Below the pieces are notes generated by a model. That model searched no databases. It was given only the letters and a program-made list of their open reading frames with translations, and was not told the origin of the DNA. DNA of 64,000 nucleotides, from IMG/VR virus record IMGVR_UViG_3300043410_001471, positions 62,001 to 126,000 of that record; one strand, 5' to 3'. Made by a program: the position numbers and the translations under genes. Shown one piece after another: positions 25,518-51,426 of the stretch (position 1 is the first letter of the stretch; each line of letters begins with the position of its first letter).

Positions 25518-26492
25518 ATGATAGTATTCATAACAACGGGTTACGGGAAAAATATAGTGGGAGGTTCTGATATATGGTGTAATAACTTTATGGAGAATAT
25601 TTTACCATTAGTTACAGAGGATTACAAAATTGTAGTTGATGGTAGACCTTTATTGCCAGAAAAAGATGCAATATATACTTTCCAAAACGATGAAGAAATA
25701 GATAGGATATTAGATGAGTGTGATAAGATAGTTTTTCTACACCACGCATACAAACCAAATCCTATAATAAAAAAGTATATTCACAAAACTCACACAACTT
25801 TTGTTCATGCGTTTATTCCTGATATGTTAGGATTAAATGATGAGTACGAAAACTTAATGACACGATTGGATTGGCATTGGCAAAAGGATATTTTAGATAA
25901 TTCGGATAATATAGTATGGATAGGATATGAAAGGGATACAATACACACATACTTTCCAAATACAATAACAATACCAAATTATTACGAATGGAAAAATAAT
26001 AAACCATTTGAAGATGTTCGTAGTAATAAAATAGGATATGCGGCAAGATGTGAAACGAGAAAGAACGCACATTATTTAGATGCAATACCTGCTTTTATAT
26101 TCTCAAACAAATACGATTACAAACGAATGTTAGAAGGTAGTAAGATAAATGCAGATGTTCACCAATTTATAGAATTCGATTATCGTTTCCATAATAAATT
26201 CTTTCAAAAAGATTTTAAAATATTTCACGGATGTTATACTAAAGAACCATTTGGATATGCAATATTTGATGCAATTGATAATGGTAAATTACCTATAATA
26301 CATTCGGACTGGATGAGAGATATTAAATATCGATATAGAGCAATGAATAAAAAGCAATTTAATTATCAGTATCTAAGAATATTAGAAGATGGTTATGAAA
26401 AAAATAAAAAACAATTCGATAGATTGAAATTGGGTTTACAAAAATATACAAATAAAGAAAAATGGATTCAGCAAATATTGGAAATACTATAA
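25518..26492 (+). CDS. GT-B fold glycosyltransferase (GT4-like)
   Basis: N-terminal FITT...GGSD; IGYAARCETRKN; EPFGYAIFDAIDNGKLPII resembles the GT4 E-x7-(E/D) donor motif. Confidence 0.7.
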   Translation: MIVFITTGYGKNIVGGSDIWCNNFMENILPLVTEDYKIVVDGRPLLPEKDAIYTFQNDEEIDRILDECDKIVFLHHAYKPNPIIKKYIHKTHTTFVHAFIPDMLGLNDEYENLMTRLDWHWQKDILDNSDNIVWIGYERDTIHTYFPNTITIPNYYEWKNNKPFEDVRSNKIGYAARCETRKNAHYLDAIPAFIFSNKYDYKRMLEGSKINADVHQFIEFDYRFHNKFFQKDFKIFHGCYTKEPFGYAIFDAIDNGKLPIIHSDWMRDIKYRYRAMNKKQFNYQYLRILEDGYEKNKKQFDRLKLGLQKYTNKEKWIQQILEIL

Positions 26493-27634
26493 AAATACAT
26501 TGCGATTATACAGAATTAAAAGGAATATTTTATGATTGTGATATATCGAATTTTGAAATAATAGAGAATTCATATTTCAATACTCAAAAAAATGCGATTG
26601 TTTTATTGGATAGAACTCAATTAGAATATTTTTACAATTCATATAAAAATAATCAAAATGAATTTGATAGAATATGCCATATGTGGAAAAAAAATAATAA
26701 TTTAATTGTTTTTTGGAGATGTCACTTTGAACCAATGATATATAATTTGGAAAAGAAATTTATTTTAAATAAATGGGATTTTAAACATATATCAATAACC
26801 GATTCAGAAATATTTAAAAATGTAGAAGGATTTTATTTTGACCATTTTTCAAATTTAATTCATATGGTGGGTTGTGATAAAAATGGATTATATGAATGCT
26901 TAGAAGATACTATTGAACATACATTTGAAAAAAAATATGATTATTCTTTTTCATTTTTCACACCTAGAATTCAAAAAATTCATTTATTAAATAAAATAAT
27001 TGATAATAAATTGACTGAAAGATGTTTGATAAGAATGAACAAACCATTTTATGATAATGAACAAATATTAACTAATCCAGAATATATTGGATTGGTAAAA
27101 CCATCTATTAAAAAATTTTACAAAGAAAATATAATATTCAGAAATTTTGATGAATATAGACCGTATGTTAAGTTTAATAACGCTGAAATGAAAATGCATG
27201 AAACACATAGTAGTGCTTATATAAAAATAAAGGAATATGATACATCGTATATAGATTTAAACGCAGAAACACATTGTATATTCAATATTCCACCTGTAAA
27301 TACCGAAAAAGTCTATAAATCATTATTTACCGAAAAACCATTTATATGTATTGGTTCTCAAAAGGTTTACGAAGAGTTGGAAAAAATTGGAATAAATACA
27401 TATGTAGATGTATTCGATTTGCATATATTGAGAGATACGAATGAACCAATAGAACATATAGATGCTATAATAGAATTTCAGAAAAAAAACATTAACAATA
27501 TTCCCAAACTATTCAATGAGTTGGAGAGTATTAGAAAACAAAATAGAAAATTATTTTTAGAACATTATAAAAAGATAACGAGAGAGGTTTACGATTTCGT
27601 AATGGGTTATTATGCAGAGCTTATTAAATCTTAA
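26462..27634 (+). CDS. Putative glycosyltransferase, distant GT10-like family (paralog 1 of 3)
   Basis: NAETH...VNTEKVYKSLFTEKPFICIG...LEKIGI.TY; same motif as 40785 and 49987. Confidence 0.45.
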   Translation: MDSANIGNTIKIHCDYTELKGIFYDCDISNFEIIENSYFNTQKNAIVLLDRTQLEYFYNSYKNNQNEFDRICHMWKKNNNLIVFWRCHFEPMIYNLEKKFILNKWDFKHISITDSEIFKNVEGFYFDHFSNLIHMVGCDKNGLYECLEDTIEHTFEKKYDYSFSFFTPRIQKIHLLNKIIDNKLTERCLIRMNKPFYDNEQILTNPEYIGLVKPSIKKFYKENIIFRNFDEYRPYVKFNNAEMKMHETHSSAYIKIKEYDTSYIDLNAETHCIFNIPPVNTEKVYKSLFTEKPFICIGSQKVYEELEKIGINTYVDVFDLHILRDTNEPIEHIDAIIEFQKKNINNIPKLFNELESIRKQNRKLFLEHYKKITREVYDFVMGYYAELIKS

Positions 27635-28376
27635 CATTATAAAAGATTATTTAACTAATAATCATACCATTGATGAAAATGGTAATTTAATTTATACACC
27701 TATAAATTATCGTTGGACTCATGGTGCAACTGATTTGCATTTGGGTGATGGATTAATGATATATTCACTCATTCAATTTAACAGAGCTAAAACATGCGTT
27801 TGTATTGGAACAGGTGGAGGATTTATTCCACGCCTTATGACTCAATCAAGAGTTGATTTGTGGCATCAAAAAATATTTGAAGGAAATCCATCGAATGAAT
27901 GGGGTGATATTGGAACTACCATAATAGTTGATGCTTCAAACGGAGTTGGCGGATTTACCGATTGGACTGAAGAAGATTCATTTTTAAGAAAACATTTTTC
28001 ACCACAAATTATATTGGAAACATCGGAAAAAGCATTTTATGATTATTTTGTAAGACAAGATATTAAAATAGATTACTTACATATTGATGGAGACCACTCA
28101 TACGAAGGTGTTAAAAAAGATTTTGAATTATATTCAACTATAATGTCTGAAAATGGAATTATTACAATTCACGATACAGACCAACTATATCACGATACAT
28201 TCGTTGTAACTGAAAATTCTAAAAAAGATTTTGCAACATTCGATGGACCTGCAAAATTTGTAAAAGAATTGCAAAATAATACCGAATGGGACTTGGTAAA
28301 TTTGAAAAATTTTCGTATATTTGAATCAAAAAGACCAACAACAACAGGATTGACACTACTAACAAGAAAAAGTTAA
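27612..28376 (+). CDS. Class I SAM-dependent methyltransferase (Methyltransf_24-like)
   Basis: CVCIGTGGG motif I; IDYLHIDGDHSYEGVKKDF...GIITIHD. Confidence 0.85.
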   Translation: MQSLLNLNIIKDYLTNNHTIDENGNLIYTPINYRWTHGATDLHLGDGLMIYSLIQFNRAKTCVCIGTGGGFIPRLMTQSRVDLWHQKIFEGNPSNEWGDIGTTIIVDASNGVGGFTDWTEEDSFLRKHFSPQIILETSEKAFYDYFVRQDIKIDYLHIDGDHSYEGVKKDFELYSTIMSENGIITIHDTDQLYHDTFVVTENSKKDFATFDGPAKFVKELQNNTEWDLVNLKNFRIFESKRPTTTGLTLLTRKS

Positions 28377-28387
28377 AAATAAAGTTA

Positions 28388-29230
28388 ATGAAAAAAGTAA
28401 GATTAGTAACAGTGACAGGAAGTAGAACAAACACTCTCTGGCATATGTTAAATCACTACAAACACATAGTTGATGAAATTTATGTAGTAGTTTATGAATG
28501 GGAAGGTATGTCTACCTTAAAAGAAGTTGGAGATATACTTAAAAACTTTCCAACTGCAAAAATAGTTAGAGTTGAGAGTAAAGAAAAATTTAATTGGGAA
28601 TATGTTACTCAATTATATAATGAAACTAAATTAATGCATCCCGATGATTGGTGGGTAGTTTCAGATGATGATGAATTTCATATATACTCTATGCCATTAC
28701 CATTTATGATAGAAGATTGTGAAGAAAATGGATGGGATATAGTAAGAGGTGGGTTTTTGGATAGAATAGGTACATTTGGAAGTTTTCCTGAAATACAACC
28801 ATATAAAAATATATTTGAGCAATTCCCATTAGCAGGATTCTTTAGATATCCATTGAGTGGTGCTTGTCCTAATAAAGTATGTGTTATGAAAGGATATGTA
28901 GAAGTTACTTCAGGGCAACATTATGCAAAAATTAATGGAGAAGTTTTATGGGGAACGCAATCTGAAAATAAATTAATAGCACCAATAGATAAATATTATA
29001 CACAGGTTCATCATTTTAAATGGGATAGTACTTGTGTAGAAAGAATTAAAGCAGTAGCAGATATTAGAAAGGATTATGCATATTCTTCAGAATACTTAAA
29101 AATGTATCAAGCTATTAGAAGAAATAATTTTGAAATTGATATTGCTAATCCAGAATTCAATATGGAATTTATTGAGCAAGGTGAGTATTCAAAATGGTCG
29201 GAATTAATGCAAAAAATAATTACAATATAA
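28388..29230 (+). CDS. GT-A fold glycosyltransferase (GT2-like)
   Basis: N-terminal strand, MLNHY..IVDEIYV, DxD-type motif WWVVSDDDEF, late HHFKW. Confidence 0.7.
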   Translation: MKKVRLVTVTGSRTNTLWHMLNHYKHIVDEIYVVVYEWEGMSTLKEVGDILKNFPTAKIVRVESKEKFNWEYVTQLYNETKLMHPDDWWVVSDDDEFHIYSMPLPFMIEDCEENGWDIVRGGFLDRIGTFGSFPEIQPYKNIFEQFPLAGFFRYPLSGACPNKVCVMKGYVEVTSGQHYAKINGEVLWGTQSENKLIAPIDKYYTQVHHFKWDSTCVERIKAVADIRKDYAYSSEYLKMYQAIRRNNFEIDIANPEFNMEFIEQGEYSKWSELMQKIITI

Positions 29231-29278: not shown

Positions 29279-29491
29279 ATGGCTACATCAAAAAAACAAG
29301 AAGAAACGCAAGAAACATCCGAATTATTACTATTAGAAGCTAAGAAAGTTAAAGCATTGGAAAAAATTGCAAACTCTTTAGATGCACTTACTGTTTGGTT
29401 TGAAGAAATCGATAAAGAAGAGTGGGGAGAGAGATTGCAATGGTATTTAGCAGAATTTCATAAGAAGATAGTGGAGGAGGATGCAAACTAA
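29279..29491 (+). CDS. Small helical hypothetical protein (70 aa)
   Basis: Directly downstream of the promoter; overlaps the next start. Confidence 0.65.
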   Translation: MATSKKQEETQETSELLLLEAKKVKALEKIANSLDALTVWFEEIDKEEWGERLQWYLAEFHKKIVEEDAN

Positions 29492-30893
29492 TCACAAATT
29501 AGGAATCATTGTACCTTATAGAAATCGATACGAACATTTAGAAACATTTAAACAATCAATTGTTAATTATTTCAATAATGGTCGTATCGATTATGAATTG
29601 ATAATAATTGAGCAAGATGATGCTAAATTATTCAATCGTGGTATGCTACTTAATATTGGATTCACATACGCAAAAAAATTAAAATGCGATTATGTAGTAT
29701 TTCACGATGTAGATATGATTCCTTTGAGTGTTGATTACTCATATTCGGATATTCCACTACATTTAGCAACCGATTTTCAATATTCTACTGATGAGAAAAA
29801 ACGTGAAGTATTTGATACATACTTTGGTGGTGTAACAATATTCCCAGTTAAAATGTTTGAATCAATTGATGGTTATTCAAACAAATATTGGGGATGGGGA
29901 TATGAAGATGATGATTTATTATTAAGATGTAAACATCACAATATACCACTTGATAGTAAAAATTTTAAAAATATAGGAAATCGAAAATATTTAAAATTAA
30001 ATGGAATTGATTCATACATTAAATTAAAAAATGTTATAGATTTTAATTATCATTTTACATTATCACTAACTTTTTGTCCAGATGATTTAAAATTAGACCA
30101 TAATAGAGAATCGGATGAGTTCACCATATTCAGTATACCTGGATATGATTTTGCTATTTCATATACATCTTTCCATCGTTATAATTTTTGTGCATTTGAT
30201 TACAAATTAAATTCACACTTTATAAATTCTGAAATAAAGCCAAACTATTTAACAAATATTACAATAACATACGATTGTGATGAGAAAGTTATAAGTGTTT
30301 ATCAGGATGGAATTCTTATAGGAAAAACCGATACTATTAGAAAGTTTTTAGTAGATTATAAAACAGCTAAAACAATTTATATAGGTGTTGGAAACCCTGA
30401 TAGAGAAGTTATACCCAATTGGTTTAAAGGATATTTCAAATCTTTTGCGTATTATGATGAAGTATTAGATGGTGATACTTTGTATAAATTGGGAACTGAA
30501 TTGGATACCATATTACCTAAATCAGAATCGTTATTAATGTACTATGATGCATCTAAAATATATGATTATAAATTAAAAGATTTATCAGGAAATAGAAATT
30601 ATGCTGAAATAGTTGCTTGTGAGATGGTAGATGTAAATGATTCGGAAGAAATTACTCATTTGATTCCATATAGAAGAAAAAGTAAATTCAAATCATTGAA
30701 GCATGATGAGAATGGATTTTTAGGAAACAAATGGAAAAATGAATGCACACGATGGAATCAATTGAGATTTATAAATGAAATTATTGATAATGAAGAATTA
30801 TTAAAAAATGATGGATTATCTACATTAGAATTCGTAGAGCATGGTGTAAAAAGAATTGATAAAAATATTAGAATAATAAATGTTGGTATATAA
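29481..30893 (+). CDS. GT7 (beta-1,4-galactosyltransferase-family) glycosyltransferase with inserted LamG-like domain
   Basis: IIVPYRNR, FNRGMLLNIG, FHDVD, YFGGV, GYSNKYWGWGYEDDD are GT7 hallmarks; a LamG-like insert follows. Confidence 0.88.
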   Translation: MQTNHKLGIIVPYRNRYEHLETFKQSIVNYFNNGRIDYELIIIEQDDAKLFNRGMLLNIGFTYAKKLKCDYVVFHDVDMIPLSVDYSYSDIPLHLATDFQYSTDEKKREVFDTYFGGVTIFPVKMFESIDGYSNKYWGWGYEDDDLLLRCKHHNIPLDSKNFKNIGNRKYLKLNGIDSYIKLKNVIDFNYHFTLSLTFCPDDLKLDHNRESDEFTIFSIPGYDFAISYTSFHRYNFCAFDYKLNSHFINSEIKPNYLTNITITYDCDEKVISVYQDGILIGKTDTIRKFLVDYKTAKTIYIGVGNPDREVIPNWFKGYFKSFAYYDEVLDGDTLYKLGTELDTILPKSESLLMYYDASKIYDYKLKDLSGNRNYAEIVACEMVDVNDSEEITHLIPYRRKSKFKSLKHDENGFLGNKWKNECTRWNQLRFINEIIDNEELLKNDGLSTLEFVEHGVKRIDKNIRIINVGI

Positions 30894-32299
30894 TGAAATT
30901 AGGAGTTTGCGTACCATATAGAAATAGAGAAGAACATATGAAAGTGTTCGTTCCTCATGTTTCAAAGTTTTTAGAAGAAAGAGGTATTGAACATACTATT
31001 TATCTTGCACATCAATGCGATGATAAACTTTTCAATAGAGGATTAATGAAGAACATTGCTGCAAAGCATGCATTTGATGATGGATGCGATTATATAGTTT
31101 GGCATGATATTGATATGGTGCCCGAAGATGATAGTTGTGATTATTCATTTCCAGAAGTAAACCCACAACATATCGCTGTTCGTATCTCACAATCGGATTA
31201 TCAGTTAAAGTATGAGGAATACTTTGGTGGAGCAGTAATATTTTCAAAAGAACAAGTTGAAAGAACCAATGGGTACTCAAATGATTATTGGGATTGGGGA
31301 ATGGAAGATGATGATTTATTTTGGAGATGTGTAATGGAGGGATATGCTGAAAAAACTCAATTAGAATATAATAAAGAACAAATTGTAGCATATTTCAATG
31401 GTGTGGATTCTAAAATAGAATTTAGACCTTCAAGAGAACAAAAAAATTGTTTATCTAATTCACATACTGTTTCCATATTAGTTAAAGCTGAACAGCAAAT
31501 AGAGAAAGTTCCCATTTGGTTGATTGGTGATAACAATAGACAATTTATGGAATATCCAATTTTCAGAAAACCTGGATACGATTGGGGATTATCTTTTAAT
31601 AATAGTAGAGCATATACAATGCAACTTTGGGATAGAATGAAAGGACATTTGTATCAATGGATTAAACGATATGAGAATCAATGGAGTTGGATTACTATGG
31701 CAGTTGATGCTGAAAATAAAAAAATACATTTTTATTTGAATGGAAAAGAATCTGATGCACGATTAGGAACGGGAACTCAATCTCCATTGTTATACAATGA
31801 ACCATTAAAAAGATATGGTATGGAGCCATTTTATGTTGGGTATTCCAAATCCCCCGTTGAATCATATTTTAAAGGAGCGATTGCATCGATAGTAATGTGG
31901 GATAGATGTTTAAACCCTAAAGAAATTAAAAATATACACACTAAATTTCCAGAAGATGGATTAGTATTGGATTTATTTACAATGGCATTGGATTTTGGGG
32001 AATCTACAAATGTTGAAACTAAAAAGGAATTAATAGAAATTCCACATACGATTTTACCATATAGAAGAGATGGTAAGTTTAAATGTTTACCACATCAGAC
32101 AGAAGGATTAATCAAAGAAGGTGGAATTGATAAATGGGCCAAAGGAGAAACAACTGCACAAAATGAAAGAAGATATGTTTTACAAATGCAGCAAGGAAAT
32201 ATTGATTATAAATCCGATGGTATTAATTCTATGAAATACGAATTATTATCAATTGATACTATATATAATAAACATAAACTTATAAATGTTAAAGCATAG
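30893..32299 (+). CDS. GT7 glycosyltransferase paralog with inserted LamG-like domain
   Basis: VCVPYRNR, FNRGLMKNI, WHDID, YFGGA, GYSNDYWDWGMEDDD; C-terminal SDGINSMKYEL. Confidence 0.88.
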   Translation: MKLGVCVPYRNREEHMKVFVPHVSKFLEERGIEHTIYLAHQCDDKLFNRGLMKNIAAKHAFDDGCDYIVWHDIDMVPEDDSCDYSFPEVNPQHIAVRISQSDYQLKYEEYFGGAVIFSKEQVERTNGYSNDYWDWGMEDDDLFWRCVMEGYAEKTQLEYNKEQIVAYFNGVDSKIEFRPSREQKNCLSNSHTVSILVKAEQQIEKVPIWLIGDNNRQFMEYPIFRKPGYDWGLSFNNSRAYTMQLWDRMKGHLYQWIKRYENQWSWITMAVDAENKKIHFYLNGKESDARLGTGTQSPLLYNEPLKRYGMEPFYVGYSKSPVESYFKGAIASIVMWDRCLNPKEIKNIHTKFPEDGLVLDLFTMALDFGESTNVETKKELIEIPHTILPYRRDGKFKCLPHQTEGLIKEGGIDKWAKGETTAQNERRYVLQMQQGNIDYKSDGINSMKYELLSIDTIYNKHKLINVKA

Positions 32300-45193: not shown

Positions 45194-45843
45194 AAAAAGA
45201 ATTATTTGAAAACGGATATGTATCATTTCATTTAAAAGATTTAGATGAAACTATTTATGAAAATCTTAAAAGTATATTTCCAATTGGTAATTTAAAGCCG
45301 GAAATGTTTAAAAACCTCAAACATGCTATACCAATGGATGTTGGATATGAATACGATAACAAATCATTGATGGATGTTTCATTCCAAAAACTTAATACTA
45401 TAAAGAGGAATATTTTAGATAAATTGGAAGAACATAATAATCAGTTGTGGTTTTATGGTTGGTTATATGAAGTCAATACTGAAAATAATCCATTTGATAA
45501 ACTTATAAAACCAATATTTAATAAATTTTACGATACAACGATAACAACAGCTAATTCACAAGTTACAATGTATAATGATGGGTGTTATCTTAGAAATCAT
45601 CGTGATGGTAATTATGAGTTTGATGGTGGTACTAGAAATTGTGTAATATTGATTTATCTATCTACCGATTATGAAAACGGAAAAGGTGGAGAGTTGGTAC
45701 TATCATCCGATAATGATAATGAATTAGTAGTAGAACCCATATATGGTAATGTTGCTGTAATGGATTTTACAAAACATGATGCCTGGCATAGAGTTGAAAA
45801 GGTTATAGATTACAATCGATATTGTTTTATAAATTTTTGCTAA
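45178..45843 (+). CDS. 2OG-Fe(II) oxygenase (prolyl-4-hydroxylase-like)
   Basis: TMYNDGCYL..HRDG (HxD), ILIYL, GGEL, WHRV, R. Confidence 0.85.
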   Translation: MESLLKKELFENGYVSFHLKDLDETIYENLKSIFPIGNLKPEMFKNLKHAIPMDVGYEYDNKSLMDVSFQKLNTIKRNILDKLEEHNNQLWFYGWLYEVNTENNPFDKLIKPIFNKFYDTTITTANSQVTMYNDGCYLRNHRDGNYEFDGGTRNCVILIYLSTDYENGKGGELVLSSDNDNELVVEPIYGNVAVMDFTKHDAWHRVEKVIDYNRYCFINFC

Positions 45844-45844
45844 T

Positions 45845-46462
45845 ATGAATGAATCGCATAAAATTCAATTATTTAAAGAAGGTTATACTACATTTAATTT
45901 ATACGAATTAAATGATTCAGAAATCAATCAATCTTTAAATGAATTGCAAACATTATCTAAAAAAGAATTTAAAAATTTAAGATATAAAACCATAAATAAT
46001 ACAAATGATGGTGTCTTTATAAAAGATTCTTTTGAAAATTTGGAAGAAATAAAAAATTCTATAAAAAAAACCAATCTTTACGAAATGTGGTATTATAACG
46101 ATGTAATACCAAAAAACAAATATAATAAGCAATTATTGAATAAAATAAAGCAATTTTTTTATAATGAAGATGTGAATGATTTTAATCATGCAACATATAT
46201 TACAATGTATAATGATGGGTGTGTTTTAATAGAGCATAATGATGGGTTTAATCCTAATTCAAAATATAAATGCGTAATACTAATTTATTTAAATGATGAA
46301 TCGGAAATTCAAACCGGTGGAGAATTGATATTAGATGGTAATATATTGATTAAACCTGTTATAGGAAATGTTGCTATAATGGATTTTACAAAGAATGATA
46401 TCAAACATGGTGTAAAAGAAGTTAGTGGATATCATAGAAAATGTTATCTAAATTTTTGTTAA
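45845..46462 (+). CDS. 2OG-Fe(II) oxygenase paralog
   Basis: TMYNDGC.L.EHNDG, ILIYLN, GGEL, HGV, RKC. Confidence 0.85.
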   Translation: MNESHKIQLFKEGYTTFNLYELNDSEINQSLNELQTLSKKEFKNLRYKTINNTNDGVFIKDSFENLEEIKNSIKKTNLYEMWYYNDVIPKNKYNKQLLNKIKQFFYNEDVNDFNHATYITMYNDGCVLIEHNDGFNPNSKYKCVILIYLNDESEIQTGGELILDGNILIKPVIGNVAIMDFTKNDIKHGVKEVSGYHRKCYLNFC

Positions 46463-46502: not shown

Positions 46503-48110
46503 ATGCAACAACCATTTAAAATATACACATTAGAATCAAATGACCAAAAGGTTTTAAAGAAAGTTTTGGAATCGTCTGTTAATATCGAAAATATACGAGC
46601 TTCATCAGAAGGAGTTGGTAATAGAAGTTATGAACTTCCAACCGATATGGTGAAAACATTGGAAAATTGTGAATTAGAAAAAACCAATATCATATCAAAT
46701 GATTCTAAATTAAGTCAAATTTGGTATACATTAAATAAGCCTGAAAATAAGATAGAAGTTGAAAAAATGTTAGAAAAGCATTTTAAACAATTATATCCCA
46801 ATATAACTTATCCTTTGGAAATTTTATGGAATGTTACAATGTATACAGAGGGGTGTTTTATTGAAGAACATATAGATGGTAGAGATGCCGATAGAATGGC
46901 TGGATTTTTATTTTATTTAAATGAAAGTTATGATAGTGATAATGGTGGTCTATTAAGAGTTATAGACCCAAATACAAATGAAATAACAAATATTGTTCCG
47001 GAATTCGGACAAGCAATATGTATAGATTATATAAACAATGAGGTATCACACGAAGTGACACCTGTTAAACAAGGAAAAAGATTAGCAATTTGCGCATTCA
47101 TTCATAAAAGAAATCATATGGGAAAAAGTTACAAAATTTTAGTTACTGGAGCAAGTGGATTTATAGGTTCACAATTGGTTAAAAGTTTAAAAGAAAGAGG
47201 ATATTGGAATTTACGAACAACTTCATTTAGTAGAGACTTACCAAATACAATCAAAGATAAGGAATCAATTGAACATTTTAAAGGAGATTTACAAGATGCA
47301 AACTTTTGTAAGGAAGTTTCCGAAGGTGTAGATGTAGTATTTCATTGTGCAGCAAATACATCAAACGCATTAGATACAAAACAAAATCCTTTATTACATG
47401 TTACTCCAAATGTAGAAATGAATGTAAATTTGATGGAACAAAGTTGGAGAAATGGAGTTAAGAAGTTTATGTTTATTTCATCTAATACTGTATACCCAGA
47501 TATGAAGGACGCATTTTGTACCGAAGATATAAATATCCATGCAACTCCTACATTTCCAATATATGGGGCGGTTGGTAATATGAAAAGATATGGTGAATTA
47601 CTTTGTGAATATTTTTCAAAACAAATCCATAATCCAATGCAATGTGTAATTATTAGACCATCAAATGCATTTGGACCAAATGATAAATTTGATTTCGAAA
47701 AGTGTCATGTTACACCTGCAAACATTCGTAAAGTTGCAGATGGTTTAAATCCAATTCCGGTATGGGGTGATGGTAGTGAGGTAAGAGATTTACTTCATGT
47801 TGAAGATATGGCGGATGGTATGATATTTTTAGCAGAAATGGTAGATAAATATTCTATTTACAATGTTTGTTATGGAGAAGGATTTAGTGTAAATGAAGTA
47901 TTAGGATGGATTAAAGAAGCTGATAATAATGATAATCCTGTCGAATATGTAAATAATAAAGCTCCAATGATTCCTGTTAGATTAATGTCATCTAAAAAAA
48001 TAAATGAGTTGGGGTGGAAACCAAAAAGAGATTTAAAGCAAGCTCTTAAAGAAACATTGGAATGGTATAAAGAACATAAACACTTATATAATCCAAACTC
48101 AAAACCATAA
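46503..48110 (+). CDS. In-frame fusion of a 2OG-Fe(II) oxygenase and a GDP-fucose-synthase-like SDR
   Basis: N-half EHIDG, FLFYLN, GGLL, HEV, R; C-half (from Met at 47118) TGASGFIG, FISSNTVY, VGNMK in place of YxxxK, RPSNAFG, WGDGSEVRD. Confidence 0.85.
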   Translation: MQQPFKIYTLESNDQKVLKKVLESSVNIENIRASSEGVGNRSYELPTDMVKTLENCELEKTNIISNDSKLSQIWYTLNKPENKIEVEKMLEKHFKQLYPNITYPLEILWNVTMYTEGCFIEEHIDGRDADRMAGFLFYLNESYDSDNGGLLRVIDPNTNEITNIVPEFGQAICIDYINNEVSHEVTPVKQGKRLAICAFIHKRNHMGKSYKILVTGASGFIGSQLVKSLKERGYWNLRTTSFSRDLPNTIKDKESIEHFKGDLQDANFCKEVSEGVDVVFHCAANTSNALDTKQNPLLHVTPNVEMNVNLMEQSWRNGVKKFMFISSNTVYPDMKDAFCTEDINIHATPTFPIYGAVGNMKRYGELLCEYFSKQIHNPMQCVIIRPSNAFGPNDKFDFEKCHVTPANIRKVADGLNPIPVWGDGSEVRDLLHVEDMADGMIFLAEMVDKYSIYNVCYGEGFSVNEVLGWIKEADNNDNPVEYVNNKAPMIPVRLMSSKKINELGWKPKRDLKQALKETLEWYKEHKHLYNPNSKP

Positions 48111-48829
48111 TGGATAGTATATTATTTTCAGGTTGTTCTTACACATATGGAGAGGGATTGTGGAGAGAAACAGGTGATACACATCAAAATTCTGAAAATC
48201 AAAAATATCTTTTAGAAAATAGATGGACAACAAAAGTTTCAAATCATTTTAATCTCAATCAAATTTCAAAAGGGTACAATGGTGGAAGTAACATTGGTTC
48301 TATTAAATTTGTAAGAGAAGAATTTGATGCAACTACTTGGAATGGGAATGATATTAAATTGATATTATTTCAAACTACGCAATTCAATAGACACAAATTT
48401 AGTATAGATGAACAAATATCCGAATTAGAAAAATTTGTAAAAGAATTTGAAAATAAAAATATACCTGTAAGATTTATACATTGGCAATGGGTTGATATAA
48501 CGGATGAAGAGATGGAAATATTCTTAAATAGAAAGCATGATTTTTTAGGAAAATTAAATCCATCATTTTTTCCAGATAAAACAATTCCACCATATGATGG
48601 TAATAAATTAACTTCTAAAATAATAAGAGATAGAACAATCAGAATTTTAGATAAATTTAATTTTCACGAAATGGTGTATCATAACGATGCACATAAAAAA
48701 GGAACATTATCTAACAAATATACATTGGCTGGAAAATTAAGATGTGAAGATTTCCATATGAATCAAGAAGGGCATGATATTTTAACAAATGAAATAATTA
48801 ATTATATAGAAAAAAATAAGTTATTATGA
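48110..48829 (+). CDS. SGNH-like protein (paralog 5 of 5)
   Basis: FSGCSYTYG, GGSNIGS, DFHMNQEGH. Confidence 0.65.
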   Translation: MDSILFSGCSYTYGEGLWRETGDTHQNSENQKYLLENRWTTKVSNHFNLNQISKGYNGGSNIGSIKFVREEFDATTWNGNDIKLILFQTTQFNRHKFSIDEQISELEKFVKEFENKNIPVRFIHWQWVDITDEEMEIFLNRKHDFLGKLNPSFFPDKTIPPYDGNKLTSKIIRDRTIRILDKFNFHEMVYHNDAHKKGTLSNKYTLAGKLRCEDFHMNQEGHDILTNEIINYIEKNKLL

Positions 48830-49365
48830 ATACACCTCAATATTCTCCTTACAAAGATGCACTAACAAATGCTATGACTGAATTAGCAAAATTAGATGAT
48901 AGTATCTTTATTGGACAACAAATAGTTTATGCTGGAAATCCTATGTCTACAACATTAGGAGAAGTTCCAAAAGAAAAAATGATTGAAGTTCCTGTTATGG
49001 AAGAAACTCAAATGGGAATGAGTTTAGGATTGGCAATGACTGGTAAACGAGTAATAACATTTTATCCTCGTTGGGATTTTATTATTTCAGCAACCAATCA
49101 ATTAGTAAATCATTTGGATAAGTTTGAAATAATGACTGGTAAAAAGCCAAATGTAATAATTCGTTTAGGTAAAGGTTCTGATAAACCATTAGACCCTGGT
49201 CATCAACATAAAGGAAATTATTTTGAAGAGTTTAAATCTTTATGCAAGAACATAGAATTTCACGATTTAAAAACTCCTTCGGATATCGAATCGGCATATA
49301 AATATGCTACAAAAGAAGGTGGTGTGCATTTATTAGTAGAATACCCCGAATTATATTATAGTTAA
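48826..49365 (+). CDS. TPP-dependent enzyme, E1-beta/transketolase pyrimidine-binding subunit (no C-terminal domain)
   Basis: FIGQ...IE.PV.EETQMG...GLAM.G, NQLVNHLDK, GHQH; only 179 aa. Confidence 0.85.
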   Translation: MNTPQYSPYKDALTNAMTELAKLDDSIFIGQQIVYAGNPMSTTLGEVPKEKMIEVPVMEETQMGMSLGLAMTGKRVITFYPRWDFIISATNQLVNHLDKFEIMTGKKPNVIIRLGKGSDKPLDPGHQHKGNYFEEFKSLCKNIEFHDLKTPSDIESAYKYATKEGGVHLLVEYPELYYS

Positions 49366-49994
49366 TGAAAGAATTGATATTAGAAAATGGTAAAGTCGTT
49401 TATGATGAGATATACGATGGTGGTGGTAGCTCTTTTGGTGTAAATGCACTTAGAGATGAGAGAGTAAAATCCGTAATAAAAAGAGGAAACATATTGGAAA
49501 TGTGTTCTGGTCCAGGCTTTATGGGGTTTTTTTTAAATTTTGAAGGATTTGCAGATTATTTGGTTTTATCTGATATAAATGATGTACATGAATCATACAT
49601 TAGAGAAACTATTCTACAAAATAATTTGATGAATACTAAATTCATTCAATCAGATGGATTTAAATCATTCTATATACATAATGTGTTTGATACGATTGTT
49701 ATGAATGCACCACATTATGCATCTCCTAGAAATGGAGGATATGTTAGTAAAGAGGAAGAACTTATTTGTTTAGACCAAGATTTAGAATTCCACAAACATT
49801 TTTTTAAAACGGCAAAAAATTATTTAAAAAAAGATGGAGTTATCATATTAATTGGTAATATGGGCGGAATCCAACCACAAGAAATAATTGATATGGCTGG
49901 CGATGAATATTTATGTAATCTAATAGCATGTGAAAGATATGGTTGGATTAGAGATTCTAGGTTTTATGTTTTAGAAATAAAAGTAAATGGGTAG
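49365..49994 (+). CDS. Class I SAM methyltransferase (HemK/PrmC-like, probable N-methyltransferase)
   Basis: LEMCSGPG motif I, SDIN, SDGF, IVMNAPHY (NPPY-like motif IV). Confidence 0.8.
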   Translation: MKELILENGKVVYDEIYDGGGSSFGVNALRDERVKSVIKRGNILEMCSGPGFMGFFLNFEGFADYLVLSDINDVHESYIRETILQNNLMNTKFIQSDGFKSFYIHNVFDTIVMNAPHYASPRNGGYVSKEEELICLDQDLEFHKHFFKTAKNYLKKDGVIILIGNMGGIQPQEIIDMAGDEYLCNLIACERYGWIRDSRFYVLEIKVNG

Positions 49995-51426
49995 TAAAGA
50001 AAAAATAGTAGTTGGGTATGATATATTGTTTCCATACAATGAAGTTCCCAATTGTCTAAATCCAAAATATTTAGAATTTGCATATCATACCGATTGGACC
50101 TTCGATACATCGGAACATTATTTTAAAAATAAATTAAAAGCCATATGGCCGGTATTCAATGCAAGATTCAATGTACAATTAAATGATGAAGATGGCAACC
50201 CTGGTTATTTTGGAATAGAAACCCGCTCGGTTCATAGTATTATCAGAGAAAGAGAAAGAGGTAATTGTTATGATTGGTATTATTTAATTGAACCATATGG
50301 TGATATTGCTAATTTTTTAGGATTGGATAAATTTTCAAATAATATACCATTTAGTAAATTAATTCCATCAAAAACATTAGAAGAAATACGAGATTGGGGT
50401 GGAAAATTAGTTATTAACTATGTAATAGATGGTAATATAAATAAATTTCAATTAATAAAATTGTATAAATGTTTATTAGATTTAAATATTCCATTTAATA
50501 AGATTATCATATGTCATAATGATTTTAATTTAGAAAAAATGATGAAGCCAATATTTGGTGAAGATTTTCCAAAATTGATTCATTTTTGTTGGTCATTAAA
50601 TTCGAAAGCTGAAGAATACTTTAAGAAATTAAATCAAGATGATTATAATTTTTGGCAAGATGAAAATAAAAAAGCATCTTATAACTTTCTAACAACTGAA
50701 GAAGTATCCAATTTTGATAATAAAATTTACAAATTCAATAATTTCAATAGAAGAATTAGATTTCATAGAGCTGAAGTTTTATATTTTTTATGGAAAAATA
50801 ATATGATTGAAAATAATTTAATTAGTTATGATATGAATTTGTTTTTGGATGGTCCATTGGATGATATGAAATCTAGATTGAATGAAAATGAGTATAATGA
50901 ATTCATAAATTATATTCAACAAACATCTCCAAGAATAATAGATTATGATAATTTGGATAATGTATGGGGGTACGGATTTGAAAATAAAGAAGTATATTTG
51001 AATTCATTGATATCAATTGTTTCAGAAACTTTATTTTATGAAGAGAGTGGATATCTATCCGAAAAGATATGGAAACCAATAGTTCATGGACATCCTTTCA
51101 TATTAATAGGACCTGCAAATTCTTTGAAATTTTTGAAAGAAGAATTTGGATTCAAAACATTTGAACCAATAATAAATGAAAATTATGATTCCGAAGAAAA
51201 TCCTAAAAAAAGATTAGAATTAGTTTTGAATGAAATAGCTAGATTAAATAGTTATTCAATAGATGAATTGAAGGAAATGATAAAAGAATTAATACCTATT
51301 ATAAAGCATAATAAAAAACTTATGTATGATATTGGTAGTAAACATATATCATTAGACCATTATCATTTTTTAAAATTAACAGGTAGAGAAAAGTTAATAC
51401 CAAAACCAAAAATATCAATATTATGA
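49987..51426 (+). CDS. Putative glycosyltransferase, distant GT10-like family (paralog 3 of 3)
   Basis: FNNFNRR.RFHR; ISIVSET...YLSEKIWKPI..GHPFILIG...LKFLK..FGFKTF..INENYD. Confidence 0.5.
   Translation: MGSKEKIVVGYDILFPYNEVPNCLNPKYLEFAYHTDWTFDTSEHYFKNKLKAIWPVFNARFNVQLNDEDGNPGYFGIETRSVHSIIRERERGNCYDWYYLIEPYGDIANFLGLDKFSNNIPFSKLIPSKTLEEIRDWGGKLVINYVIDGNINKFQLIKLYKCLLDLNIPFNKIIICHNDFNLEKMMKPIFGEDFPKLIHFCWSLNSKAEEYFKKLNQDDYNFWQDENKKASYNFLTTEEVSNFDNKIYKFNNFNRRIRFHRAEVLYFLWKNNMIENNLISYDMNLFLDGPLDDMKSRLNENEYNEFINYIQQTSPRIIDYDNLDNVWGYGFENKEVYLNSLISIVSETLFYEESGYLSEKIWKPIVHGHPFILIGPANSLKFLKEEFGFKTFEPIINENYDSEENPKKRLELVLNEIARLNSYSIDELKEMIKELIPIIKHNKKLMYDIGSKHISLDHYHFLKLTGREKLIPKPKISIL

What the first reader, a model, noticed from the sequence alone, without database searches (positions are those of the whole stretch)
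25518..51426. 26-kb, 28-gene phage-encoded glycan synthesis and decoration system between tail-fibre and head genes
Seen: GT4-like, GT2-like, 2 GT7, 3 GT10-like, RmlC, 3 sugar SDRs, TPP alpha and beta subunits, HAD plus gPRT-like, 5 SGNH-like, 3 2OG oxygenases, 2 radical SAM, 2 methyltransferases and a free LamG protein, all co-oriented and tightly overlapping. I see no flippase, Wzy polymerase, chain-length regulator, ABC exporter or undecaprenyl-P initiating transferase, and no obviously multi-TM protein. Established: host capsule or LPS loci and serotype-converting phage cassettes need membrane components. Inference: this is a cytoplasmic pathway building a complex, heavily decorated glycan on a phage substrate. 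The most likely substrate is virion protein (as in glycosylated mycobacteriophages and giant viruses); DNA is the alternative.
Basis: partly seen in the sequence, partly recalled or inferred. Interest (0 to 1): 0.85.

Follow-up and report, generated by a model that had tools for sequence, protein, structure and literature searches.

The report
Phage-encoded soluble glycan-building gene cluster
An uncultured 245-kb T4-like phage carries a 26-kb block of 28 genes that makes unusual sugars and joins them into a decorated glycan without any membrane export parts; hundreds of related phages carry the same block, but what the glycan is attached to (virion, host surface or DNA) is still unknown.

Summary
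Window 25518-51426 contains 28 co-oriented, tightly packed genes. They encode 7 glycosyltransferases (one GT4-fold, one GT2-like, two GT7+LamG, three of a new GT-B family) and three sugar SDRs, one fused to a 2OG oxygenase. There are also an RmlC-like epimerase, a split ThDP enzyme, two radical SAM enzymes, two further 2OG oxygenases, two methyltransferases, two HAD-like proteins, five SGNH-like proteins, a free LamG protein and a conserved 70-aa protein.

No multi-pass membrane protein is encoded here, nor among 2,762 ORFs of 158 related loci.

The block is a fixed feature of a large clade of uncultured phages. It has a conserved core and a variable tailoring arm. It usually follows tail-fibre genes and lies upstream of the terminase gene. 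Several of its families look virus-restricted.

The acceptor is unresolved. I favour virion protein (about 0.4) over host envelope polysaccharide (about 0.3). DNA is less likely, because no thymidylate-synthase-like or TET-like gene is in the window.

The nearest precedents are the cyanophage P-SSM2 "LPS" clusters and the Mimivirus fibril glycogene clusters. I rate it a new variant of a known kind, moderately to highly interesting.

The parts
25518..26492 (+). GT4-fold (GT-B) glycosyltransferase; first gene of the conserved core
   Evidence: No Pfam or PHROG hit. AF2 pLDDT 91. Foldseek PDB hits to GlgM, PimA, BshA and WaaG, E 6e-10, TM 0.6-0.66. Family found in 120 of 158 related loci.
26462..27634 (+). 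Member of the new GT-B family (paralogue of 40785 and 49987); accessory
   Evidence: hhalign 98.4% to the C-terminal half of the 40785 family. Present in 26 loci.
27612..28376 (+). Class I SAM methyltransferase (Methyltransf_24); core
   Evidence: Pfam PF13578, 1.8e-10. Found in 140 loci.
28388..29230 (+). GT2-like GT-A glycosyltransferase with an invariant DDD motif; core
   Evidence: 22 of 27 family members hit Glyco_tranf_2_4, best E 7.7e-7. D93, D94 and D95 are invariant. Found in 149 loci.
29279..29491 (+). Conserved 70-aa acidic protein of unknown role; the 28th gene; core
   Evidence: ORF listed. Homologue in 151 of 158 loci. A promoter-like TATCTTTATAAA lies 24 nt upstream.
29481..30893 (+). 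GT7 (beta-4-galactosyltransferase-like) glycosyltransferase with a LamG-like C-terminal half; core
   Evidence: Pfam 7N 2.1e-21 and 7C 5e-17. DVD and WGWGYEDDD motifs are visible in the translation. Full-length paralogue of 30893.
30893..32299 (+). GT7 glycosyltransferase fused to a Laminin_G_3 (ConA-like) domain; core
   Evidence: Pfam 7C, 7N and Laminin_G_3. 262 relatives in IMG/VR. No match in 50,697 deposited phage genomes. All Atlas clusters with this architecture are viral.
32302..33702 (+). Radical SAM enzyme with an N-terminal twitch domain; core and the most conserved gene
   Evidence: NF033640, 353 bits. CX3CX2C at residue 138 plus four N-terminal Cys. 559 relatives in IMG/VR.
33702..34436 (+). 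Free LamG/ConA-like protein; core
   Evidence: hhalign 99.1% to the LamG region of 30893. Found in 148 loci.
34438..35403 (+). Extended SDR acting on NDP-sugars (GalE / 4,6-dehydratase-like)
   Evidence: Pfam Epimerase 2.1e-35. NCBIfam best partial hits are GalE and dTDP-glucose 4,6-dehydratase.
35405..35950 (+). RmlC-like NDP-4-keto-6-deoxyhexose 3,5-epimerase (cupin)
   Evidence: Pfam dTDP_sugar_isom 9.3e-33. TIGR01221, 107 bits, below the equivalog cut-off.
35950..36783 (+). SGNH-like hydrolase/acyltransferase (GDSFT motif)
   Evidence: Weak Lipase_GDSL_2 hit. Sequence shown. hhalign 99.9% to the 36780 family.
36780..37535 (+). SGNH-like protein (GCSFT motif)
   Evidence: hhalign 99.2% to the 43095 family and 99.9% to the 35950 family.
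37532..38167 (+). Short ThDP-binding subunit (E1-alpha-like, 211 aa)
   Evidence: Pfam E1_dh 9.3e-14 and TPP_enzyme_C. Partial hit to PDH E1 alpha.
38169..39389 (+). Second radical SAM enzyme with C-terminal auxiliary-cluster cysteines; part of a mobile 3-gene sub-module
   Evidence: Pfam Radical_SAM 1.6e-12 and Fer4_12. CX3CX2C at residue 156 and CX2CX2C at 377. Co-occurs with 39386 and 39771 in about 32 loci.
39386..39826 (+). HAD phosphatase (PNKP-phosphatase / acid phosphatase B type)
   Evidence: Pfam HAD_PNKP 8.8e-17.
39813..40769 (+).
   Evidence: No Pfam or NCBIfam hit. Atlas: score 0.94 to 'HAD family hydrolase' clusters, structural TM 0.85-0.91, and the Atlas record starts at residue 15.
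40785..42107 (+). New GT-B-fold glycosyltransferase family with a GT10-like E...EK motif
   Evidence: No hit in Pfam, PHROGs or PDB sequence searches. AF2 pLDDT 89.8. Foldseek shows a GT-B fold: OtsA, VldE, MurG, FUT13. BFVD matches are uncultured phages and Mimivirus LCMiAC02. 470 unnamed protein clusters, none with a Pfam domain.
42097..43095 (+). Extended SDR, GDP-L-fucose-synthase-like (probable 4-reductase)
   Evidence: Pfam Epimerase 5.6e-33. NCBIfam best partial hit is Fcl, 1.1e-34.
43095..44111 (+). SGNH-like protein (GCS...N...H conserved; DUF6071-related)
   Evidence: Alignment A4 invariants G8, C9, S10, N61 and H319. 6 of 20 members hit DUF6071.
44108..45193 (+). SGNH-like protein, paralogue of 43095
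   Evidence: BLASTP 30% identity, 3.6e-52. Weak DUF6071 hit.
45178..45843 (+). 2OG-Fe(II) oxygenase (P4H-type, PF13640)
   Evidence: Pfam 7.6e-11. HxD motif at residue 141.
45845..46462 (+). 2OG-Fe(II) oxygenase, paralogue of 45178
   Evidence: Pfam 9.7e-7. BLASTP 35% identity to 45178.
46503..48110 (+). Fusion of a 2OG-Fe(II) oxygenase (N-terminal) with an extended SDR (Fcl/GalE-like)
   Evidence: Pfam 2OG-FeII_Oxy_3 3e-13 and Epimerase 6.9e-48. In deposited phages only the SDR half matches, at about 30% identity. TATCTTTATAAA lies 24 nt upstream.
48110..48829 (+). SGNH-like protein (GCSYT motif)
   Evidence: hhalign 97.1% to the 36780 family.
48826..49365 (+). Short ThDP pyrimidine-binding subunit (E1-beta-like, 179 aa)
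   Evidence: Pfam Transket_pyr 1.3e-7. Partial hit to PDH E1 beta.
49365..49994 (+). MTS-type (RsmC/HemK-like) SAM methyltransferase
   Evidence: Pfam MTS 1.9e-8.
49987..51426 (+). New GT-B family glycosyltransferase, paralogue of 40785; last gene of the cluster
   Evidence: BLASTP 32% identity over 205 aa, 7.5e-20. Aligned in A1 with the invariant E...EK motif.

Best explanation
The block is a complete set of soluble enzymes for building a glycan, carried by a whole phage lineage.

Proposed steps (each inferred from family membership, not shown):
1. It starts from host NDP-hexoses; it encodes no sugar kinase or nucleotidyltransferase of its own.
2. The SDRs and the RmlC-like epimerase make 6-deoxy-L-hexose-type sugars.
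3. A minimal split ThDP enzyme probably adds a two-carbon branch to a keto-sugar.
4. The two radical SAM enzymes and three 2OG oxygenases carry out C-H chemistry such as epimerisation, oxidation or hydroxylation.
5. Seven glycosyltransferases assemble an oligosaccharide.
6. Two methyltransferases, five SGNH-like acyl-handling proteins and two HAD-type phosphatases decorate it.

Organisation. A conserved core builds an invariant inner part. The core is GT4, a methyltransferase, GT2-like, the 70-aa protein, two GT7-LamG enzymes, the twitch radical SAM enzyme and the free LamG protein. A rapidly reshuffled downstream arm makes a lineage-specific outer part.

Acceptor. Because no variant encodes any membrane step, I think assembly happens in the cytoplasm on a phage-specified acceptor. 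The most likely acceptor is virion protein (tail fibres or another exposed structural protein). In that reading the LamG modules act as the acceptor- or glycan-binding parts.
For: Shown:
- Enzyme inventory.
- No multi-TM ORF in the cluster or among 2,762 + strand ORFs of 158 related loci.
- Conserved core and variable arm. Core families occur in 120-156 of 158 loci. The variable pool in relatives includes Sulfotransfer_2, UDP-sugar dehydrogenase, a small cytidylyltransferase-like protein and a third radical SAM enzyme.
- Fixed genomic position. A tail-fibre-family gene lies within three ORFs upstream in 41 of 68 non-redundant loci. Glycan genes lie directly upstream of the 51569 homologue and the terminase gene in 13 of 15 loci anchored on the terminase gene.
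- Virus-restricted families. All Atlas clusters with GT7+LamG are viral. The GT-B family has 470 unnamed clusters, on contigs of at most 245 kb among the 120 clusters listed. Its structural neighbours are uncultured phages and Mimiviridae. Deposited phage genomes contain neither family.
- The exact promoter-like 12-mer TATCTTTRTAAA occurs three times on the + strand: before 29279, before 46503 and before the portal gene.

Precedent: giant viruses and mycobacteriophages glycosylate their own virions using virus-encoded, clade-specific gene sets (PMC9614988; PMC12619734, citing Freeman 2023).
Against: - No acceptor has been identified.
- The major capsid protein is the same length as that of Flavobacterium phage immuto, which lacks the cluster, and 53% identical to it; it has no extra tail.
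- O-antigen and capsule glycosyltransferases are also soluble, and the host could supply the initiating transferase, flippase and polymerase.
- The comparable P-SSM2 cluster also has no annotated membrane gene and is interpreted as host-surface modification (PMC7824862).
- Hypervariability fits superinfection exclusion equally well.
- The shared promoter-like motif is conserved only among close relatives (9 of 100 upstream regions).
- Tail-fibre adjacency may reflect only a shared variable genomic island.
- The TM scan is a crude hydropathy method.
- The individual chemical steps are inferred from family membership only.
Confidence: 0.42

Rival explanations
1. Host-envelope remodelling. The phage enzymes make new NDP-sugars and add them to host undecaprenyl-linked O-antigen, capsule or protein-glycan intermediates. 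The host's own initiating transferase, flippase, polymerase and ligase finish the job. The changed cell surface blocks superinfection or stops progeny from re-adsorbing to debris.
For: - The same kind of cluster in cyanophage P-SSM2 (PSSM2_257-271: SDRs, GT2, GT1, 2OG, methyltransferase) is interpreted this way (PMC7824862).
- Glycosyltransferases of surface-polysaccharide pathways are normally soluble or peripheral (established knowledge), so the absence of TM proteins does not exclude this.
- The variable arm differs even between phages whose radical SAM enzymes are 94-98% identical. This mirrors O-antigen-like diversification.
Against: - No variant among 158 loci carries any flippase, polymerase or acetyltransferase-type membrane protein. 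Known serotype-converting phage cassettes (Gtr, Oac) consist largely of such proteins (established knowledge).
- The key glycosyltransferase families look virus-restricted rather than borrowed from host loci.
- The conserved core implies one conserved acceptor across a clade diverse enough to have different hosts.
- No integrase or lysogeny gene was seen in the window.
Confidence: 0.3
2. DNA hypermodification. The glycosyltransferases attach a complex glycan to a hydroxylated or hydroxymethylated base in phage DNA to evade restriction and CRISPR.
For: - Phages do attach mono- to trisaccharides to DNA using GT-A and GT-B enzymes, often with partner epimerases (10.1101/2023.12.21.572611; PMC13326640).
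- The cluster has 2OG oxygenases, methyltransferases and an MTS-type methyltransferase.
- PDB neighbours of the GT4 model include a phage glycosyltransferase (9iqz).
Against: - Hallmark partners are missing from the 64-kb window and the extra 19 kb read: no thymidylate-synthase homologue, TET/JBP-type oxygenase or C5-cytosine methyltransferase.
- The 2OG enzymes are PF13640 (P4H-type), not TET/JBP-type.
- Seven glycosyltransferases plus acyl, branch and methyl tailoring far exceed any known DNA glycan.
- The LamG lectin-like modules and the tail-fibre neighbourhood do not fit DNA.
- About 160 kb of the genome was not examined.
Confidence: 0.07
3. A soluble glycosylated small molecule or glycolipid (a secondary-metabolite-like product) made during infection, for example a toxin, signal or protectant, rather than a glycan attached to a macromolecule.
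For: - Radical SAM, 2OG, ThDP, methyltransferase and HAD enzymes are typical of natural-product sugar tailoring.
- Iyer et al. raise this possibility for a second cyanophage cluster (PMC7824862).
- GT4 structural neighbours include small-molecule and lipid glycosyltransferases: BshA, PimA, AviGT4, SenB.
Against: - The cluster has no aglycone-building genes (PKS, NRPS or terpene synthase) and no exporter.
- Seven glycosyltransferases and two or three LamG modules suggest an oligosaccharide on a macromolecule.
- Lineage-wide conservation next to structural genes points the same way.
Confidence: 0.1

Closest known systems
Cyanophage P-SSM2-type 'LPS / capsular polysaccharide modification' clusters of T4-like jumbo phages (Sullivan 2005; Iyer et al. 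2021, PMC7824862)
   Same: A co-oriented, overlapping block in a large T4-like phage. It holds several NAD-dependent sugar epimerase/dehydratase paralogues, a cupin sugar epimerase, glycosyltransferases of several families, 2OG oxygenase(s) and methyltransferase(s). No flippase or polymerase is annotated. Its function is untested.
   Different: - The block here is nearly twice as large (28 genes against 15).
- Only the generic SDR domains are homologous, at about 29-31% identity.
- P-SSM2 and all deposited phages lack GT7-LamG and the GT-B family.
- The block here has radical SAM enzymes, a split ThDP enzyme, five SGNH-like proteins and LamG modules.
- It has no sugar kinase or nucleotidyltransferase.
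- It has a conserved core and sits next to tail-fibre genes.
Mimivirus-genus clade-specific glycogene clusters that build the glycans of the virion fibrils (PMC9614988)
   Same: - Virus-encoded clusters of 9-21 genes for bacterial-type rare sugars, glycosyltransferases, methyltransferases and, in one clade, sulfate metabolism.
- Content is clade-specific.
- They act in the cytoplasm without the host secretory pathway.
- The new GT-B family has structural neighbours in Mimiviridae.
- Relatives of this phage carry a sulfotransferase.
   Different: Those are eukaryotic giant viruses in which the virion glycan has been demonstrated. Here the virus is a tailed phage and no product or acceptor is known. 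The genes here form one operon-like block rather than having individual promoters.
Mycobacteriophage virion glycosylation (Freeman et al. 2023, as summarised in PMC12619734)
   Same: Phage-encoded soluble glycosyltransferases located in the structural gene region, modifying virion proteins in the cytoplasm.
   Different: Those systems have one or two glycosyltransferases and use host sugars, with glycans on C-terminal extensions of the capsid and tail-tube subunits. Here there are 28 genes with de novo sugar tailoring, and the capsid protein shows no extension.
Phage DNA glycan hypermodification gene clusters (10.1101/2023.12.21.572611; PMC13326640)
   Same: Phage GT-A and GT-B enzymes with partner sugar epimerases, and diversification of the glycan.
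   Different: Those clusters are built around a thymidylate-synthase homologue or a TET-like 5mYOX with a C5-methyltransferase. None is in this window, and the glycans made there are one to three sugars.
Core glycosyltransferase orthogroups of 'moraphages', 200-307-kb aquatic phages with predicted Bacteroidota hosts (PMC12619734)
   Same: Large uncultured aquatic phages, distantly related to T4 and to Rhodothermus phage. Four putative glycosyltransferase orthogroups are among the genes shared by most members. The portal protein here also matches Rhodothermus phage RM378 and Flavobacterium phages.
   Different: I could not test whether this contig belongs to that lineage. The paper does not describe a cluster, its sugar-tailoring genes or its organisation.
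Bacterial O-antigen/capsule loci and flagellin glycosylation islands
   Same: NDP-sugar tailoring genes plus several glycosyltransferases and methyl/acyl decoration, with hypervariable gene content between close relatives. Flagellin islands likewise act in the cytoplasm without flippase or polymerase (established knowledge).
   Different: O-antigen and capsule loci carry the initiating transferase, Wzx/Wzy or an ABC exporter in the same cluster. All of these are absent here and in all relatives.

Membership tests
Wzx/Wzy- or ABC-transporter-dependent surface polysaccharide locus | In-cluster polyprenyl-phosphate initiating transferase, flippase or ABC exporter, polymerase and chain-length regulator (all integral membrane proteins) | tested here: not met
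   No protein in 25518-51426 has more than one hydrophobic 19-aa window, and the single one is the ThDP-binding glycine-rich segment of 37532. None of 2,762 ORFs in 158 related loci has four or more such windows. No Pfam hit to these families.
Wzx/Wzy- or ABC-transporter-dependent surface polysaccharide locus | NDP-sugar biosynthesis genes plus several glycosyltransferases | tested here: met
   Three SDRs, RmlC and seven glycosyltransferases.
Serotype-converting phage cassette (Gtr / Oac type) | Membrane proteins GtrA and GtrB with a serotype-specific GtrC, or a membrane O-acetyltransferase, carried by a temperate phage | tested here: not met
   No TM proteins. No integrase was found among the window proteins that were annotated. 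The rest of the genome was not examined.
Phage DNA glycosyl-hypermodification cluster | Thymidylate-synthase homologue or TET/JBP-type 5mYOX (with or without a C5-cytosine methyltransferase) next to the glycosyltransferases | tested here: not met
   The 2OG enzymes match PF13640/PF13661 only. The methyltransferases are PF13578 and PF05175. Nothing of this kind appears in the flanks. About 160 kb of the contig was not examined.
T4-like/jumbo phage sugar cluster of the P-SSM2 type | Co-oriented block with SDR paralogues, a cupin epimerase, multi-family glycosyltransferases, 2OG oxygenase and methyltransferase in a T4-like phage | tested here: met
   for the block. for the T4-like baseplate, terminase, portal, gp23 and gp13 genes. 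for the comparator.
T4-like/jumbo phage sugar cluster of the P-SSM2 type | Own sugar kinase and HIGH-type nucleotidyltransferase for sugar activation (described for the complete clusters, PMC7824862) | tested here: not met
   None lies within 25518-51426. Some relatives have a 137-aa CTP_transf_like gene between the GT7 genes. The adjacent 1562-aa protein has such a domain, but its two ends are homologous to a protein of Mel-JY01, where no such cluster lies within 17 kb upstream of the portal gene.
Virus-encoded virion glycosylation system | Glycan demonstrated on a virion protein | not testable with these tools
   The phage is uncultured. This needs glycoproteomics or staining of particles.
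Virus-encoded virion glycosylation system | Glycosyltransferase genes embedded among structural genes, plus a recognisable acceptor feature | tested here: inconclusive
   Position after the tail-fibre genes and before the terminase, portal and capsid genes. No capsid extension relative to a phage that lacks the cluster. Tail-fibre acceptors were not assessed.
CAZy GT7 (beta-4-galactosyltransferase-like) | Glyco_transf_7N and 7C domains above the Pfam threshold, with DXD and WGWG-x-EDDD motifs | tested here: met
   Scores of 61.7-76.4 bits against cut-offs of 23 and 27. Motifs visible in the 29481 translation. DID motif of 30893 in the pattern list.
CAZy GT4 | GT-B fold closest to GT4 structures; sequence-family match | tested here: inconclusive
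   The fold criterion is met. There is no Pfam, PHROG or PDB sequence match.
CAZy GT10 (alpha-1,3/4-fucosyltransferase) | Sequence or clear structural match to GT10; conserved donor-binding E...EK motif | tested here: inconclusive
   GT-B fold with low TM (0.3-0.37). The only GT10 structure is at rank 34. E321, E333 and K334 are invariant. Their resemblance to the GT10 motif is recalled from memory only.
SGNH/GDSL hydrolase superfamily | Catalytic Ser (block I), Gly, Asn and His (block V); family HMM match | tested here: inconclusive
   S10, N61 and H319 are invariant, but block I reads GCS rather than GDS. Pfam hits are below threshold (Lipase_GDSL_2 at 18 bits; DUF6071 in 6 of 20 members). 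No PDB sequence hit.

The most novel reading that the evidence does not exclude
A widespread clade of uncultured aquatic jumbo phages builds its own complex, hypervariable glycan coat on tail fibres or other virion proteins. Assembly is entirely in the cytoplasm and uses virus-only enzyme families: GT7-LamG, a new GT-B family, a GCS-type SGNH family, a twitch radical SAM enzyme and a minimal split ThDP enzyme. This would be a tailed-phage counterpart of the Mimivirus fibril glycocalyx, with a conserved inner core and a swappable outer part.
Probability: 0.35. Interest if true: 0.85.

Novelty: new variant of a known kind. Interest (0 to 1): 0.62.

Why it matters
Self-encoded glycosylation of virions is established for giant viruses and for a few mycobacteriophages. 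Large sugar clusters in cyanophages have gone unexplained for 20 years.

This block shows that such clusters can be a fixed, lineage-wide module in hundreds of environmental phage contigs. The module has a conserved core, a fast-evolving tailoring arm and several enzyme families that appear restricted to viruses.

If the glycan coats the virion, it would affect host recognition, particle stickiness, grazing and decay in lakes and oceans. If it remodels the host surface, it is a large investment in superinfection exclusion by a lytic phage.

Either way, the block is a source of unexplored carbohydrate enzymes. These include a LamG-fused GT7, a new GT-B family, a minimal split ThDP enzyme likely to make branched sugars, and an N-terminal-twitch radical SAM enzyme.

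Tried and rejected
- Megablast of window 1-25000 against 50,697 phage genomes found no match, so no annotated close relative exists.
- PHROGs on ten unannotated cluster proteins gave essentially nothing.
- phmmer searches of five proteins and profile searches of four families against PDB sequences found nothing significant. Folds had to come from AF2 plus Foldseek.
- I considered adding the next gene (51569-56257, N-terminal cytidylyltransferase-like) to the cluster as the missing sugar-activating enzyme. I rejected this. Its two ends are 37-38% identical to a 639-aa protein of Microcystis phage Mel-JY01, where no such cluster lies within 17 kb upstream of the portal gene. Its C-terminal part has a KxDG ligase-type motif.
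- The T4 late-promoter consensus TATAAATA is not enriched (22 found, 22.6 expected). Sigma-70-type promoters and intrinsic terminators are not above chance and none marks the cluster borders.
- The shared TATCTTTRTAAA element is not conserved beyond close relatives, so I give it little weight.
- The cellular context of the twitch radical SAM enzyme was uninformative. In Bdellovibrionota it sits in tandem arrays of paralogues without glycan genes.
- Walking along the source contig with the look-up of encoding contigs added only about 19 kb: protease, gp23 and gp13. One look-up failed. I stopped because it could not cover the remaining 160 kb.
- Literature searches for GT7/LamG phage enzymes or a description of this cluster found nothing.

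Full report
**Where the window comes from**

The window is positions 62001-126000 of a 245,436-bp metagenomic contig, JGI 3300043410 Ga0451707_0000003, also listed as IMGVR_UViG_3300043410_001471. All genes are on the + strand and G+C is about 30%.

The phage is a distant T4-like myovirus:
- gp25/gp6-like baseplate wedge proteins;
- a fused SbcD-SbcC;
- a tail fibre with a C-terminal S74 chaperone domain;
- large terminase and T4-type portal;
- further downstream, an S77 prohead protease, gp23 and gp13.

The closest cultured relatives by portal protein are Microcystis phage Mel-JY01 (50%) and Flavobacterium phage immuto (48%), followed by Rhodothermus phage RM378. Neither Mel-JY01 nor immuto has a comparable cluster within 17-20 kb upstream of its portal gene. 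Megablast of the first 25 kb against deposited phage genomes found nothing.

The host is unknown. Bacteroidota is suggested by the relatives and by the 'moraphage' paper (PMC12619734). Two contigs carrying the same cluster have been binned into Pelagibacterales MAGs; that could be mis-binning at low G+C or a hint about the host.

**Checking the observation**

Between 25518 and 51426 there are 27 + strand ORFs of at least 80 aa. A 70-aa ORF at 29279-29491 is conserved in 151 of 158 related loci. Most neighbours overlap or abut. Only two gaps exceed 15 nt.

Pfam and NCBIfam directly confirm these families:
- two GT7 enzymes, one with a Laminin_G_3 hit and the other its full-length paralogue;
- two radical SAM enzymes; 32302 is a strong member of the N-terminal-twitch family NF033640;
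- three extended SDRs, one fused to a 2OG oxygenase;
- an RmlC-like epimerase;
- short E1-alpha-like and E1-beta-like ThDP subunits;
- a HAD phosphatase;
- two free P4H-type 2OG oxygenases;
- two methyltransferases.

Ten proteins had no hit, so I built families from related loci:
- 25518 has a GT4 fold. AF2 pLDDT is 91. Foldseek finds GlgM, PimA, BshA and WaaG at E 6e-10 and TM 0.6-0.66.
- 28388 is GT2-like. 22 of 27 members hit Glyco_tranf_2_4, and a DDD motif is invariant.
- 26462, 40785 and 49987 are one family with a GT-B fold (pLDDT 89.8).
- 33702 is a free LamG protein (hhalign 99.1%).
- 35950, 36780, 43095, 44108 and 48110 are one SGNH-like superfamily. Ser, Asn and His are invariant, and block I reads G-C-S in four of them.
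- 39771 is HAD-like rather than phosphoribosyltransferase-like.

A hydropathy scan finds no multi-pass membrane protein.

**Boundaries**

Upstream lie the tail fibre (20412-23960) and a DUF5977 protein (23960-25504).

Downstream, 51569-56257 encodes a 1562-aa protein with an N-terminal cytidylyltransferase-like domain. I considered it as the missing sugar-activating enzyme. Its two ends are homologous to a 639-aa protein of Mel-JY01, and its C-terminal part carries a KxDG ligase-type motif.

**Distribution and architecture**

IMG/VR holds 559 stretches encoding relatives of the radical SAM enzyme 32302, 262 encoding relatives of GT7-LamG, and at least 598 encoding relatives of the terminase.

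In 158 fetched loci a core is nearly always present and in the same order. Some contigs were fetched twice. The core is:
1. GT4 (25518), replaced in one subgroup by a DUF6734-type protein;
2. the methyltransferase 27612;
3. the GT2-like 28388;
4. the 70-aa protein;
5. two or three GT7-LamG genes;
6. the twitch radical SAM enzyme;
7. the free LamG protein.

Downstream of the core the content varies. It differs even between phages whose radical SAM enzymes are 94-98% identical. The 38169-39386-39771 trio comes and goes as a unit. Relatives add a carbohydrate sulfotransferase, a UDP-sugar dehydrogenase, a small cytidylyltransferase-like protein, a third radical SAM family and further SGNH-like and GT-B paralogues.

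The location is stable:
- A tail-fibre-family gene lies within three ORFs upstream in 41 of 68 non-redundant loci.
- In 13 of 15 loci anchored on the terminase gene that reach far enough, glycan genes sit directly upstream of the 51569 homologue.
- A more distant phage-like contig binned as Neomarinimicrobiota shows the same theme: a Peptidase_G2 tail-spike-type gene followed by a block of radical SAM and GT-B genes.

None of 2,762 + strand ORFs of at least 80 aa in these loci has four or more hydrophobic windows. The absence of membrane components is therefore a property of the whole family, not of this one genome.

**Virus restriction**

- Every ESM Atlas cluster with the GT7+LamG architecture is 100% viral. 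The nearest cellular look-alike is a GT2+LamG protein of Bacillota at score 0.88.
- The GT-B family comprises 470 protein clusters. Among the 120 listed, none carries a functional name or a Pfam domain, and all sit on contigs of at most 245 kb.
- Its structural neighbours among viral models are uncultured freshwater-type phage proteins and a Mimivirus-group protein.
- Neither family has any tblastn match in 50,697 deposited phage genomes.
- The twitch radical SAM enzyme does have cellular homologues (40-48% identity), mostly in Bdellovibrionota. There it forms tandem arrays of paralogues with no glycan genes, which says nothing about its substrate here.

**How it most likely works**

What is shown is the enzyme set and its organisation. 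The chemistry is inferred from family knowledge.

- With no kinase or nucleotidyltransferase, the pathway must draw on host NDP-hexoses.
- 34438 (GalE/4,6-dehydratase-like), 35405 (3,5-epimerase) and the Fcl-like reductases 42097 and 46503-C would give 6-deoxy-L-hexoses.
- The split ThDP enzyme (37532 and 48826) resembles E1-type pairs that add two-carbon branches to keto-sugars in antibiotic sugar pathways. This comparison is from my own knowledge and was not tested.
- The radical SAM and 2OG enzymes provide C-H chemistry.
- Seven glycosyltransferases assemble the chain.
- Methyltransferases, SGNH-like proteins and HAD phosphatases decorate or process it.
- The split into core and variable arm suggests a conserved inner structure with a variable outer one.

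**The acceptor**

The acceptor is the open question.

For virion protein:
- the total absence of membrane parts in all variants;
- virus-restricted glycosyltransferase families;
- LamG modules;
- the fixed position after tail-fibre genes and before head genes;
- a promoter-like 12-mer shared with the portal gene;
- the precedents of giant viruses and mycobacteriophages (PMC9614988; PMC12619734).

Against it:
- no acceptor has been identified;
- the capsid protein has no extension relative to immuto;
- the shared motif is not widely conserved;
- soluble glycosyltransferases are normal in host surface-polysaccharide pathways, which could supply the membrane steps.

The closely analogous P-SSM2 cluster is interpreted in the literature as host LPS or capsule modification against superinfection (PMC7824862).

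DNA glycosylation is less likely. Its hallmark partners (a thymidylate-synthase homologue, or a TET-like oxygenase with a C5-methyltransferase; 10.1101/2023.12.21.572611, PMC13326640) are absent from the roughly 83 kb examined, and the tailoring capacity far exceeds known DNA glycans. About 160 kb was not examined.

My estimates are: virion protein 0.4, host envelope 0.3, small glycoconjugate 0.1, DNA 0.07, other 0.1.

**Comparison and novelty**

This is the same kind of object as the cyanophage 'LPS' clusters and, functionally, the Mimivirus glycogene clusters. It differs in four ways:
- size (28 genes);
- enzyme complement (GT7-LamG, new GT-B and SGNH-like families, twitch radical SAM enzyme, minimal split ThDP enzyme, 2OG-SDR fusion);
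- a clear organisation into core and variable arm;
- its status as a lineage-wide fixture next to the tail-fibre genes.

The moraphage paper notes four core glycosyltransferase orthogroups in what may be the same lineage, but it describes no cluster. I found no description of this module in the literature searched. I rate it a new variant of a known kind, with interest about 0.6.

Noticed in passing
window 51569-56257: A 1562-aa protein. Its N-terminal HIGH-type cytidylyltransferase-like domain (aa 9-208) and its C-terminal ~410 aa, which carry a KxDG ligase-type motif, are 37-38% identical to the two ends of a 639-aa protein of Microcystis phage Mel-JY01. The ~940-aa middle part is extra and unannotated. 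It lies directly after the glycan cluster in most relatives.
   Followed up: partly
window 7206, 12226, 14162, 15365, 51557, 61596, 63305 (+ strand): ATATTTATA occurs nine times on the + strand, and seven of these are intergenic. Six lie 12-30 nt upstream of a start codon (7228, 12256, 14177, 51569, 61623, 63334) and one lies just after the stop at 15361. This is a candidate phage promoter class, although the overall count is not above chance (12 found, 8.4 expected).
   Followed up: partly
window 29255, 46479, 59807 (+ strand): The exact 12-mer TATCTTTRTAAA occurs three times, all intergenic and 24-29 nt before the starts of 29279, 46503 and the portal gene. It contains a TAnnTTTG-like element reminiscent of the Bacteroidota -7 box. 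It is conserved only in close relatives (9 of 100 upstream regions).
   Followed up: partly
L173 9914-20204 (also L177, L184, L197, L199, L205): Bdellovibrionota chromosomes carry tandem arrays of up to seven paralogous N-terminal-twitch radical SAM genes (about 445 aa each), with no glycan genes nearby. Their function is unknown.
   Followed up: partly
L163 and L168 (NHJA01000031.1, VHCC01000006.1): Contigs assigned to Pelagibacter/Pelagibacterales MAGs carry this phage glycan module; L168 has 17 homologous genes in order. They are probably phage contigs mis-binned by low G+C, or possibly a hint about the host.
   Followed up: partly
L179 2161-18350 (and the matching L178): A contig binned as Neomarinimicrobiota has a Peptidase_G2 (tail-spike chaperone) protein followed by a block of unannotated genes. 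The block includes two twitch radical SAM genes and homologues of the new GT-B family. It looks like a phage or prophage with the same tail-fibre-then-glycan arrangement.
   Followed up: partly
window 16992-20150: A single 1052-aa ORF combines SbcD-like (N-terminal) and SbcC-like (C-terminal) PHROG matches, so the nuclease and ATPase subunits are fused.
   Followed up: no
window 15609-16013: A strong match to T7-type endonuclease I (Phage_endo_I, 1.2e-58) in a T4-like genome. It is preceded by the longest non-coding stretch of this part of the window (247 nt).
   Followed up: no
window 14105-14176: A G+C-rich hairpin followed by a T run (ggcccacc-tttc-ggtgggttttt) lies just after the stop of 12887-14104 and just before an ATATTTATA element. 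It is the clearest terminator-like site seen in the window.
   Followed up: no
window 7228-12207: A 1659-aa ORF with a TTG start has no PHROG match at all. It sits among baseplate and tail genes and is probably a large structural or fibre protein.
   Followed up: no
window 12887-14104 and 14177-15361: Two adjacent proteins with no family match share a C-terminal domain (29% identity over 136 aa).
   Followed up: no
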